In this document: positions 18,262 through 18,442 of the stretch, piece after piece | Layout of the letters: the number at the start of each line of letters is the position of its first letter | Position numbering within the stretch: position 1 is the first letter of the stretch | Assembly: GCA_053919585.1 (NCBI GenBank) | Contig: CM132801.1 | DNA length: 51,757 bases | Strand: one strand, 5' to 3' | Origin: Euprymna scolopes | Taxonomy: Eukaryota | The notes under the pieces: generated by a model | Seen by the model: the letters and a program-made list of their open reading frames with translations, nothing else | Told to the model about the DNA's origin: nothing | Database searches by the model: none | Program-made: the position numbers and the translations under genes

Positions 18262-18442
18262 CTTCGGGACAAGATCAAAGTGTAGTATCTGTTCTTCAGA
18301 TGCTGCACTTCTATTTCTTGTTCTCTTTCGGTGGAGGAGAAATCCTTCACGACTGAGACAATTTTTATTTTTGTACCTTTTCTCCACGTTAAAAAACGAC
18401 CCTGGTGTCTAACTCTGTCCCGTGGGGAGGCATAGTAAATAG
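18262..18442 (+). mobile_element. U2 snRNA-headed SINE-like element, type copy with 11-bp TSD
   Basis: cttcgggacaagatcaaagtgtagtatctgttctt head; TSD TTACACCAGTT at 18251-18261 and 18443-18453. Confidence 0.88.

What the first reader, a model, noticed from the sequence alone, without database searches (positions are those of the whole stretch)
18262..18442. A SINE family whose head is U2 snRNA rather than tRNA
Seen: 7 copies in 52 kb (2773, 3986, 5910, 18262 and three at 35291-35762), variable 5' truncation, a common 3' end and an 11-bp TSD here. The longest head (minus strand from 35682) begins CTTCTGGCCTTCGGGTCAAGATCAAAG; with the other copies the consensus continues TGTAGTATCTGTTCTT. Known: U2 starts ATCGCTTCTCGGCCTTTTGGCTAAGATCAA(A)GTGTAGTATCTGTTCTT; snRNA-headed SINEs (SINEU) are rare and were described from crocodilians. 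The body is not U2. It has a GAAA-capped hairpin, an Sm-site-like ATTTTTG and internal T5 runs that should stop Pol III, and no A/B boxes. Inference: an independently evolved, abundant invertebrate U2-SINE, probably transcribed by Pol II from an snRNA-type upstream promoter and mobilised by a LINE via its 3' tail.
Basis: partly seen in the sequence, partly recalled or inferred. Interest (0 to 1): 0.85.

Follow-up and report, generated by a model that had tools for sequence, protein, structure and literature searches.

The report
U2-headed short retroposon family in squid
This is one real copy of a very abundant short mobile element of a squid genome whose front end was copied from U2 spliceosomal RNA, a type of element published so far only from crocodilians.

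Summary
The window has seven copies of a ~190-nt non-coding retroposon. They share a 3' end (...GGCATTGTAAATAGGAAC[A], no poly-A) and are 5'-truncated at different points. The copy at 18262-18442 has a perfect 11-bp target-site duplication.

In the six copies that keep a front end, the first ~35-43 nt match U2 snRNA up to nt 47. The U2 16-mer occurs 6 times against 0.02 expected, and Rfam U2 gives E=1e-4. The body alone gives no U2 signal.

Contigs of public runs put the family at roughly 10^4-10^5 copies. Runs under at least five other organism labels also hold it.

The three stacked copies at 35290-35763 are independent insertions into one site, each separated by a 13-bp duplication. They are not a satellite and do not sit inside a U2 head.

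I file the family as a new, invertebrate member of the SINEU kind (Kojima 2015). It differs in having no poly-A tail, a hairpin that pairs the U2 branch-site sequence, and an Sm-like site.

Pol II transcription from an snRNA-type promoter is untested. The head ends 9 nt past the cut site of U2-homing LINEs, which points to a LINE landing-site flank as its origin. No partner LINE lies in this window.

The scan has already found this family more than ten times elsewhere in this genome.

The parts
18262..18442 (+). The SINE copy of the finding. It is 181 nt, 5'-truncated at about U2 nt 14, and its 3' end is 5 nt shorter than the family end.
   Evidence: 96.7% identical to the window consensus
18251..18261 (+). 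Upstream target-site duplication TTACACCAGTT
   Evidence: 11/11 identical to 18443-18453
18443..18453 (+). Downstream target-site duplication TTACACCAGTT
18262..18296 (+). U2-derived head (U2 nt ~14-47), ending ...GTGTAGTATCTGTTCTT
   Evidence: Rfam U2 alignment, with posterior probabilities near 1 only over the head; 16-mer test
18278..18310 (+). 14-bp hairpin. U2 nt 30-43, which includes the branch-site sequence GUAGUA, pairs with an inverted copy (CAGATGCTGCACTT) across the loop TTCTT.
   Evidence: Present in all six head-bearing copies. Variants switch between G.U and A-U pairs.
18331..18350 (+). GAAA-capped hairpin, part of a longer imperfect stem
18360..18373 (+). Sm-site-like AATTTTTATTTTTG. 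It is predicted single-stranded between two hairpins and holds two T5 runs.
   Evidence: No variant of 10% or more across the family at the equivalent place 35365-35379.
18378..18442 (+). 3' hairpin (TTTTCTCCAC...GTGGGGAGG) and 3' terminus ...CATAGTAAATAG
3986..4167 (+). SINE copy that starts at about U2 nt 18; no clear TSD
2771..2961 (-). SINE copy that starts at about U2 nt 16; no clear TSD
5908..6115 (-). Copy of an older or second subfamily: 85% identical to the consensus, a 31-nt insertion, lacks CAG after the head
   Evidence: The same insertion is the consensus of 168 contigs' loose ends.
35290..35476 (-). Array copy 3 (3'-most), which starts at CCTTCGGG (U2 nt ~13)
35488..35681 (-). 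Array copy 2, with the longest head in the window (from TTCTGGCC, U2 nt ~6)
35695..35763 (-). Array copy 1, truncated to the last ~67 nt
35762..35774 (-). 13-bp direct repeat AGTATCAGCTTCC. This is the target-site duplication that is sandwiched between the array copies.
   Evidence: Identical copies lie at 35682-35694 and 35475-35487, and a diverged copy (AGTATCAACTTCTTCC) at 35274-35289.

Best explanation
The stretch is one retroposed copy of a non-autonomous, non-coding retroposon family of a squid genome. A full-length copy is ~190-195 nt.

The RNA has six parts, from 5' to 3':
- U2 snRNA nt 1-47, that is stem-loop I plus the branch-site region;
- an inverted copy of U2 nt 30-43, which locks the branch-site region in a 14-bp hairpin;
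- a long GAAA-capped hairpin;
- a single-stranded AAUUUUUAUUUUUG;
- a 3' hairpin;
- a fixed 3' end, ...GUAAAUAGGAAC(A), without poly-A.

Shown: head and body move as one unit by target-primed reverse transcription borrowed from a LINE. The evidence is TSDs of 11-13 bp, variable 5' truncation with microhomology at 5' junctions, and a constant 3' end. The family numbers roughly 10^4-10^5 copies. The same site can be hit repeatedly, which gives head-to-tail stacks with a TSD between units.

Inferred:
- The head was most likely acquired as the upstream U2 flank of a U2-homing (Keno-type) LINE or its deletion derivative, co-transcribed from a U2 gene. The reason is that the head stops at nt 47, 9 nt past the published Keno/Utopia nick between nt 38 and 39. 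A 9-bp TSD would put the junction exactly there.
- The tail hairpin plus the fixed end is the part the partner reverse transcriptase recognises.
- Transcription is not by Pol III from an internal promoter. It probably depends on outside promoters.

My odds: family and LINE-type mobilisation about 0.95; head picked up as a LINE landing-site flank about 0.5; dedicated Pol II snRNA-type transcription about 0.25.
For: - Seven copies with a shared body and 3' end.
- A perfect 11-bp TSD encloses head plus body.
- U2 identity of the head, and no U2 signal in the body alone.
- The head/body boundary is the same in the five main-subfamily copies that keep a head. In the sixth (5908-6115, second subfamily) the CAG right after the head is missing.
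- Word depth reaches 1-5 million over the element against ~20 on the single-copy flank in a DNA run. 28,663 contigs were laid, and runs under other organism labels hold the element too.
- Loose ends of 450 contigs continue the head upstream as TTCTTGG, and one tandem contig begins ATTGATTCTTGGCC. Full-length heads therefore reach about U2 nt 1, with changes that look like CpG decay.
- Loose ends after GGAAC(A) run into unrelated AT-rich flanks, so the 3' end is fixed and has no poly-A.
- The array copies carry different subfamily markers (GGGAC against GGGTC) and different 5' ends behind the same 13-mer, so they are independent insertions.
- Depth over the junction 13-mer falls to 15-560, so the 13-mer is local target sequence, not part of the element.
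- The downstream U2 flank of Keno and Utopia starts at nt 39, TCTGTTCTTATCAG (PMC4640811; PMC6136364).
- Crocodilian Tx1 LINEs share U1/U2 heads with SINEU, and tandem SINEU insertions sandwich a TSD (PMC4494074).
- There are no A or B boxes and two internal T5 runs.
- The RNA folds better than shuffles, z = -3.3 and -4.4.
Against: - No partner LINE with this tail or leader lies in the window. The only LINE (9518-12601, minus strand) is Jockey/BS-like with a poly-A tail and an unrelated 3' end.
- None of the six heads in the window is interrupted at nt 38/39.
- The two well-defined target sites are not significantly U2-like (P about 0.37 and 0.95), so U2-directed homing is not visible here.
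- A head ending at nt 47 could also come from a template switch onto free U2 snRNA.
- Depth from assembled contigs is not a true copy number.
- The RNA runs give no evidence of a discrete transcript.
- I could not search Dfam or Repbase, so the family may already be catalogued.
Confidence: 0.7

Rival explanations
1. A few master loci keep an snRNA-type upstream promoter (PSE). Pol II transcribes the element from U2 nt 1 as an snRNA-like RNA that may be capped and Sm-bound, and a LINE copies this RNA through its 3' tail.
For: - The head seems to start at U2 nt 1 in full-length copies (loose ends and a tandem contig).
- The overall layout resembles an snRNA: stem-loop I, an AUUUUUG core that is single-stranded between hairpins, and a length of ~190 nt.
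- That segment is the most uniform part of the family.
- Internal T5 runs argue against Pol III.
Against: - No copy in the window has its own upstream flank with a promoter.
- The Sm-like core lacks the flanking purines of the consensus.
- The RNA/DNA depth ratio is only 2-5x that of the flank.
- Retroposed copies would lose an upstream promoter, so 10^4-10^5 copies would have to descend from very few masters.
Confidence: 0.25
2. The head was added once by template switching. A reverse transcriptase that was copying the body RNA jumped onto free U2 snRNA at nt 47 and ran to its 5' end, and the chimera then became a master copy. Kojima proposed this route for SINEU-1.
For: - Kojima 2015 documents recurrent 5' additions of U1/U2 sequence to SINEU, with microhomology at the junctions.
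- The fixed junction is compatible with a single founding event.
Against: - This model does not explain why the junction lies exactly 9 nt past the Keno/Utopia nick.
- It does not explain why an inverted copy of U2 nt 30-43 follows the head.
- It does not say how the chimera is transcribed.
Confidence: 0.25
3. The whole element is a strongly diverged U2 snRNA. It would be like crocodilian SINEU-3 or monomeric Alu, not a U2 head fused to foreign sequence.
For: - The length (~190 nt) and the order of modules match U2.
- The Rfam U2 model lays the GAAA hairpin on a U2 stem-loop and AUUUUU on the Sm site.
Against: - Posterior probabilities outside the head are low (0.2-0.5).
- The body alone gives no U2 match even at E<=10.
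- The letters just after nt 47 are an inverted copy of the head, not U2 stem-loop IIa.
Confidence: 0.07
4. The copies are U2 genes or pseudogenes split by a U2-targeting retroposon, or the stretch at 35290-35763 is a satellite.
For: - The U2 head is always upstream of the non-U2 part.
- There are three head-to-tail units in one place.
Against: - No U2 nt 39 onward follows any 3' end.
- The TSD of the 18262 copy encloses head and body together.
- The array units have different 5' ends and different subfamily markers, with a locus-specific 13-mer between them.
Confidence: 0.02

Closest known systems
SINEU (SINEU-1, -2, -3) of crocodilians, Kojima 2015, PMC4494074
   Same: - Short non-coding retroposons whose 5' head is copied from U1 or U2 snRNA.
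- Internal oligo-T runs and no Pol III promoter.
- 5' truncation and TSDs.
- Tandem insertions that sandwich a TSD.
   Different: - Host: a cephalopod mollusc, not a crocodilian.
- Tail: no poly-A, whereas all SINEU have one.
- Head: exactly U2 nt 1-47, followed by an inverted copy of nt 30-43.
- Sm-like site between hairpins.
- Copy number: roughly 10^4-10^5, against 10^2-10^4.
- The window shows no preferred host transposon as target.
- The partner LINE was not seen here; in crocodilians it is Tx1-Mar.
Keno (Tx1 clade) and Utopia, U2-gene-homing LINEs (PMC4640811, PMC6136364)
   Same: They cut U2 between nt 38 and 39. The U2 piece left upstream of such an insertion, together with a 9-bp TSD, equals the head seen here (nt 1-47).
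   Different: They are autonomous coding LINEs that sit in U2 genes and have U2 nt 39 onward after their 3' end. The element here is non-coding and dispersed, and no U2 sequence lies downstream of it.
Classical Pol III SINEs, including the cephalopod tRNA-derived Ceph-SINEs, SK and OK/OR
   Same: Size, LINE-dependent retroposition, modular head/body/tail build, and a tail hairpin of the 'stringent' type without poly-A.
   Different: The head is not a tRNA, 7SL or 5S. There are no A or B boxes, ARAGORN finds no tRNA in the window, and two T5 terminator-like runs lie inside the element.
U2 snRNA genes and retropseudogenes (Rfam RF00004)
   Same: The first 47 nt, including stem-loop I and GUAGUA.
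   Different: The matches score 25-32 bits, below the gathering score of 46. The body is unrelated.

Membership tests
SINEU (snRNA-headed SINE, Kojima 2015) | 5' head derived from U1 or U2 snRNA | tested here: met
   Rfam U2 hits restricted to the head, E=1e-4 to 1.8e-3. The U2 16-mer occurs 6 times against 0.02 expected.
SINEU (snRNA-headed SINE, Kojima 2015) | Short (<500 bp) non-coding repeat that amplifies as one unit, not as independent chimeric retrocopies | tested here: met
   The head/body junction is the same in five of the six head-bearing copies; the sixth (5908-6115) lacks the CAG after the head. The body is shared. 28,663 family contigs were laid in one DNA run.
SINEU (snRNA-headed SINE, Kojima 2015) | LINE-type retroposition (TSD, 5' truncation) | tested here: met
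   An 11-bp TSD at 18251/18443, a 13-bp TSD in the array, and seven different 5' ends.
SINEU (snRNA-headed SINE, Kojima 2015) | 3' poly-A tail (stated for all described SINEU) | tested here: not met
   All copies end ...GTAAATAGG(AACA) and run straight into flank.
SINEU (snRNA-headed SINE, Kojima 2015) | Tx1-clade partner LINE that shares the target preference and/or the snRNA head | not testable with these tools
   No such LINE lies in the window. The metagenome scans gave 0 hits. The contig look-ups returned no DNA. Earlier notes of this scan claim such LINEs exist elsewhere in this genome; I did not check that.
Pol III SINE (tRNA/7SL/5S head) | Internal A and B boxes or a 5S/7SL-type promoter in the head | tested here: not met
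   No A box or strict B box within 2 mismatches. ARAGORN finds no tRNA. No Rfam match at gathering score.
U2 snRNA gene or pseudogene (RF00004) | Match to the whole U2 model at or above the gathering score | tested here: not met
   25-32 bits against a gathering score of 46. The body alone gives no hit at E<=10.
Keno/Utopia insertion in a U2 gene | U2 nt 39 onward (TCTGTTCTTATCAG...) directly after the element's 3' end | tested here: not met
   The 3' flanks are TTACACCAGTT, AGCCACATCG, TATTATTTC, TTTATTACAAG and AGTATCAGCTTCC.

The most novel reading that the evidence does not exclude
The element is an snRNA mimic rather than a plain hitch-hiker.
- Masters lie behind U2-type Pol II promoters, for example after homing into U2 genes.
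- The RNA keeps U2 stem-loop I and an Sm-type site between hairpins, while a built-in hairpin masks the branch-site sequence.
- It would therefore travel the snRNP export and re-import route without entering spliceosomes. On that route it would meet its LINE's proteins in the cytoplasm and return to the nucleus.
- Each new copy would also scatter a U2-type landing site through the genome.
Probability: 0.1. Interest if true: 0.8.

Novelty: new member of a known kind. Interest (0 to 1): 0.5.

Why it matters
In the paper library I searched, snRNA-headed SINEs are described only from crocodilians, where they are old and fairly rare. A young family of 10^4-10^5 copies in cephalopods would show that this route to making SINEs arose at least twice.

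It would also give a far larger data set for two questions that Kojima 2015 left open. One is how a SINE without an internal promoter is transcribed. The other is whether the snRNA head is simply the landing-site flank of a U2-homing LINE.

There is a practical side too. The family probably inflates U2 counts in cephalopod genome annotations. The giant squid paper reports ~1,300 U2 loci that are 'likely SINEs' (PMC6962438).

Tried and rejected
- Metagenome scans. I scanned public metagenome contigs twice for exact family words, once with the head/body junction and once with the conserved centre. Both gave 0 hits, so I had no outside loci.
- The LINE in the window as partner. The ORF at 9518-12601(-) has APE and RT domains. 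However, its 3' end is poly-A and unrelated to the SINE tail, and its relatives are Jockey/BS-like. Rejected.
- More squid DNA through relatives of that LINE. Three contig look-ups returned gene lists but no DNA.
- ATCAGCTTCC at the array junctions as the true U2 5' end of full-length units. Rejected for three reasons: the same 13-mer precedes three different truncation points, it follows the last copy, and its depth in the DNA run is 15-560 against 10^5-10^6 for the element.
- The array's target as a U2-like pseudo-site. It starts with AGTATC, which equals U2 nt 35-40, but a local-alignment test against random window pieces gives P about 0.37. Not significant.
- U2 homology in the body. The body-only Rfam search was negative.
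- Self-nesting into heads, as claimed in earlier notes. None of the six heads here is interrupted. No joint linking the 3' end to head nt 39 is among the best-supported joints, whose maximum depth is ~180. So I do not see it here, but contigs are a poor test of it.
- RNA evidence. The RNA/DNA depth ratio over the element is only 2-5x that of the flank. Inconclusive.

Full report
WHAT IS THERE

A blastn of 18262-18442 against the window finds eight matching pieces, which make seven copies:
- 18262-18442 (+);
- 3986-4162 (+);
- 2776-2961 (-);
- 5913-6115 (-), 82% identical, with a 31-nt insertion;
- three stacked copies on the minus strand at 35294-35475, 35492-35674 and 35699-35763.

An alignment shows one shared body and one shared 3' end...GGCATTGTAAATAGGAAC(A). 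The 5' ends differ: about U2 nt 6, 13, 14, 16, 18 and 25, and one copy keeps only the last ~67 nt.

The copy of the finding is flanked by a perfect 11-bp duplication, TTACACCAGTT, at 18251-18261 and 18443-18453. This duplication encloses head and body together, so the two moved as one RNA. Five copies are 2-5% from the window consensus and the 5913 copy is 16% away.

THE HEAD IS U2, THE BODY IS NOT

The Rfam U2 model hits the heads at E=1e-4, 1.8e-3 and 1.7e-3, scoring 25-32 bits against a gathering score of 46. Posterior probabilities are near 1 over model positions 1-47 and low elsewhere. The U2 16-mer GTGTAGTATCTGTTCT, taken from the Rfam consensus line, occurs 6 times with up to 2 mismatches. 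The expectation is 0.02, and no shuffle out of 100 reached 6.

A search of the body alone (18299-18445) finds no U2 even at E<=10. At gathering scores the whole window has no Rfam match.

The U2 match ends at ...CTGTTCTT, which is U2 nt 47. In the five main-subfamily copies that keep a head, CAGATGCTGCAC follows directly. In the sixth (5908-6115) the CAG is missing.

ANATOMY OF THE RNA

Single-copy folds and the alignment fold agree (z = -3.3 and -4.4 against shuffles). From 5' to 3' the parts are:
- U2 stem-loop I. It is intact in the longest copy as GGCC-UUCG-GGUC.
- A 14-bp hairpin in which U2 nt 30-43, including the branch-site sequence GUAGUA, pairs with an inverted copy that begins right after nt 47. 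In this copy the arms are 18278-18291 and 18297-18310, with loop UUCUU.
- A long imperfect stem capped by GAAA (18331-18350).
- AAUUUUUAUUUUUG (18360-18373), predicted single-stranded.
- A 3' hairpin (18378-18430) followed by a short free end.

Family-wide variants in the inverted arm switch between G.U and A-U pairs, so pairing is kept. With six sequences there is only one compensatory pair, so the window does not show covariation.

There is no A box or strict B box within 2 mismatches. There are two T5 runs and one T4 run. ARAGORN finds no tRNA. The AUUUUUG core of an Sm site is present, but the flanking purines of the consensus are not.

ABUNDANCE AND SPREAD

All public runs that hold the stretch are kept as assembled contigs. 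I laid four of them on 35230-35830.

In the DNA run X1 the single-copy flank has a word depth of ~17-31. Summed over the three copies, the element has 1-5 million, and 28,663 contigs were laid. The tool warns that such depth is not a copy number, so I read it only as an order of magnitude: 10^4-10^5 copies.

A DNA run under another organism label (X7) gives the same picture. It also holds the flank and the second array junction at single-copy depth, so that organism has the same array. Runs under at least five further organism labels hold family words.

The loose ends show four things:
- The head continues upstream as TTCTTGG in 450 contigs.
- One tandem contig starts ATTGATTCTTGGCC. This is U2 nt 1-14 with changes that look like CpG decay, so full-length heads reach about nt 1.
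- Beyond GGAAC(A) the flanks are unrelated and AT-rich, so the 3' end is fixed and has no poly-A.
- A second subfamily, with the 31-nt insertion seen at 5913, is common.

The stretch around the Sm-like site shows no variant of 10% or more and has the highest depth.

In the RNA run of the same organism, the RNA/DNA depth ratio over the element is 0.2-0.8, against 0.07-0.2 on the flank. Copies inside introns would explain this. It is not evidence for a dedicated transcript.

THE STACK AT 35290-35763

The three units are separated by the same 13-mer, AGTATCAGCTTCC. It also lies upstream of the first unit and, in diverged form (AGTATCAACTTCTTCC), downstream of the last.

The units have different 5' ends. 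They also carry different family-level markers, for example GGGAC against GGGTC, both of which are common variants in the contigs. Depth over the 13-mer falls to 330-560 at one junction and 15-36 at the other, against 10^5-10^6 for the element.

The 13-mer is therefore local target sequence, and the stack comes from three independent insertions into one site, each renewing the duplication. Kojima described exactly this for tandem SINEU-3 insertions.

Two of the 5' junctions show microhomology (CC and TTCC), as is usual for LINE-type 5' joining.

The 13-mer begins with AGTATC, which equals U2 nt 35-40 around the Keno/Utopia nick. However, a local-alignment test of the reconstructed empty site against the head is not significant (P about 0.37). 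The site of the 18262 copy is not U2-like at all (P about 0.95). None of the six heads in the window is interrupted.

HOW IT MOST LIKELY WORKS

Shown: retroposition of a head-body-tail RNA by a LINE-type mechanism, on a very large scale, with repeated use of some sites.

Inferred:
- The partner recognises the tail hairpin and the fixed end. This is the 'stringent' type of recognition, and it fits the absence of poly-A.
- The head was picked up from a U2 gene. Published U2-homing LINEs (Keno of the Tx1 clade, and Utopia) leave U2 nt 39 onward, TCTGTTCTTATCAG, after their 3' end (PMC4640811; PMC6136364). With a 9-bp TSD, the U2 piece upstream of such an insertion is nt 1-47, which is the head seen here. 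Co-transcription from the U2 promoter would then put that piece on the RNA. In crocodilians, Tx1 LINEs related to Keno share U1/U2 heads with SINEU.

A single template switch onto free U2 snRNA is the main alternative for the origin of the head.

Pol III transcription is unlikely.

COMPARISON WITH WHAT IS KNOWN

The closest known kind is SINEU (PMC4494074). That paper states that no SINEU was found outside crocodilians and that all SINEU have poly-A tails.

The family here meets the defining features: an snRNA head, a short non-coding unit and LINE-type retroposition. It lacks the poly-A tail. It also adds the branch-site hairpin and the Sm-like module.

Full-text searches found no description of a U2-headed SINE in molluscs or cephalopods. 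The only hint is in the giant squid genome paper, which reports ~1,300 U2 loci among RNA families with extreme counts and says many of these are likely SINEs (PMC6962438).

I could not search Dfam, Repbase or SINEBase.

EARLIER NOTES OF THIS SCAN

The scan has already reported this family more than ten times on other pieces of the same genome. Those notes say that:
- the genome is a mollusc's, and one note calls it a squid;
- the head is the first ~47 letters of U2;
- copies number tens of thousands;
- U2-homing Tx1-type LINEs in the genome carry the same leader;
- units stack inside each other's U2 pieces.

I confirmed the first three independently. The LINE claim could not be tested here. 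Stacking inside U2 heads is not seen in this window, where the stack sits at a non-U2 site.

VERDICT

The finding is a real and correctly described U2-headed retroposon family, and a new invertebrate member of the SINEU kind. The head more likely comes from a landing-site flank of a U2-homing LINE.

Noticed in passing
window 9420-12601 (-): A LINE with a 1027-aa ORF (endonuclease plus reverse transcriptase domains), a ~90-nt 3' UTR and a poly-A tail. Its relatives at 50-71% identity are abundant in public assemblies, and one is named 'transposon BS'-like (Hydra). It is not the SINE's partner, because its 3' end is unrelated.
   Followed up: partly
window 14126-16152 (+): A fragment of an LTR-retroelement pol gene (RT, RNase H and integrase zinc-finger domains).
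   Followed up: partly
window 29207-29806 (-): A 199-aa ORF with Mos1-type HTH domains, probably a mariner-like transposase remnant.
   Followed up: no
window 24119-25909 (-): A 596-aa ORF with no Pfam match at E<=0.01. Nature unknown.
   Followed up: no
window 19900-22300: Other first-stage notes propose hammerhead ribozymes at 20045-20210 and 21865-22143. Rfam gives no hammerhead match at E<=0.1 in this stretch and nothing at gathering score in the whole window. The piece at 21930-22078 matches several miRNA-precursor models on both strands (E down to 1.6e-10, below gathering), as a long palindrome would.
   Followed up: partly
window 5908-6115 (-) and contigs laid on 35359-35414: A second subfamily of the same SINE is common in the contig data. 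It has a ~31-nt insertion (consensus ATCCAGAGTGCCCCTTTTTGGGGAGCTGGA) between GTTCC and TTTTCTCC. It also has a perfect A-U version of the branch-site hairpin.
   Followed up: partly
contigs laid on window 35308-35404 and 35449-35631: There are low-copy deletion derivatives of the family. One lacks the stretch from the GAAA hairpin to the tail hairpin, and one lacks the loop of the branch-site hairpin.
   Followed up: no
window 35764-35785 (-): The flank just upstream of the array reads TATAAATAAC. It resembles the element's own 3' end, GTAAATAGGAAC. It could be a fourth, extremely truncated copy, or a target preference for sequence like the element's end.
   Followed up: no
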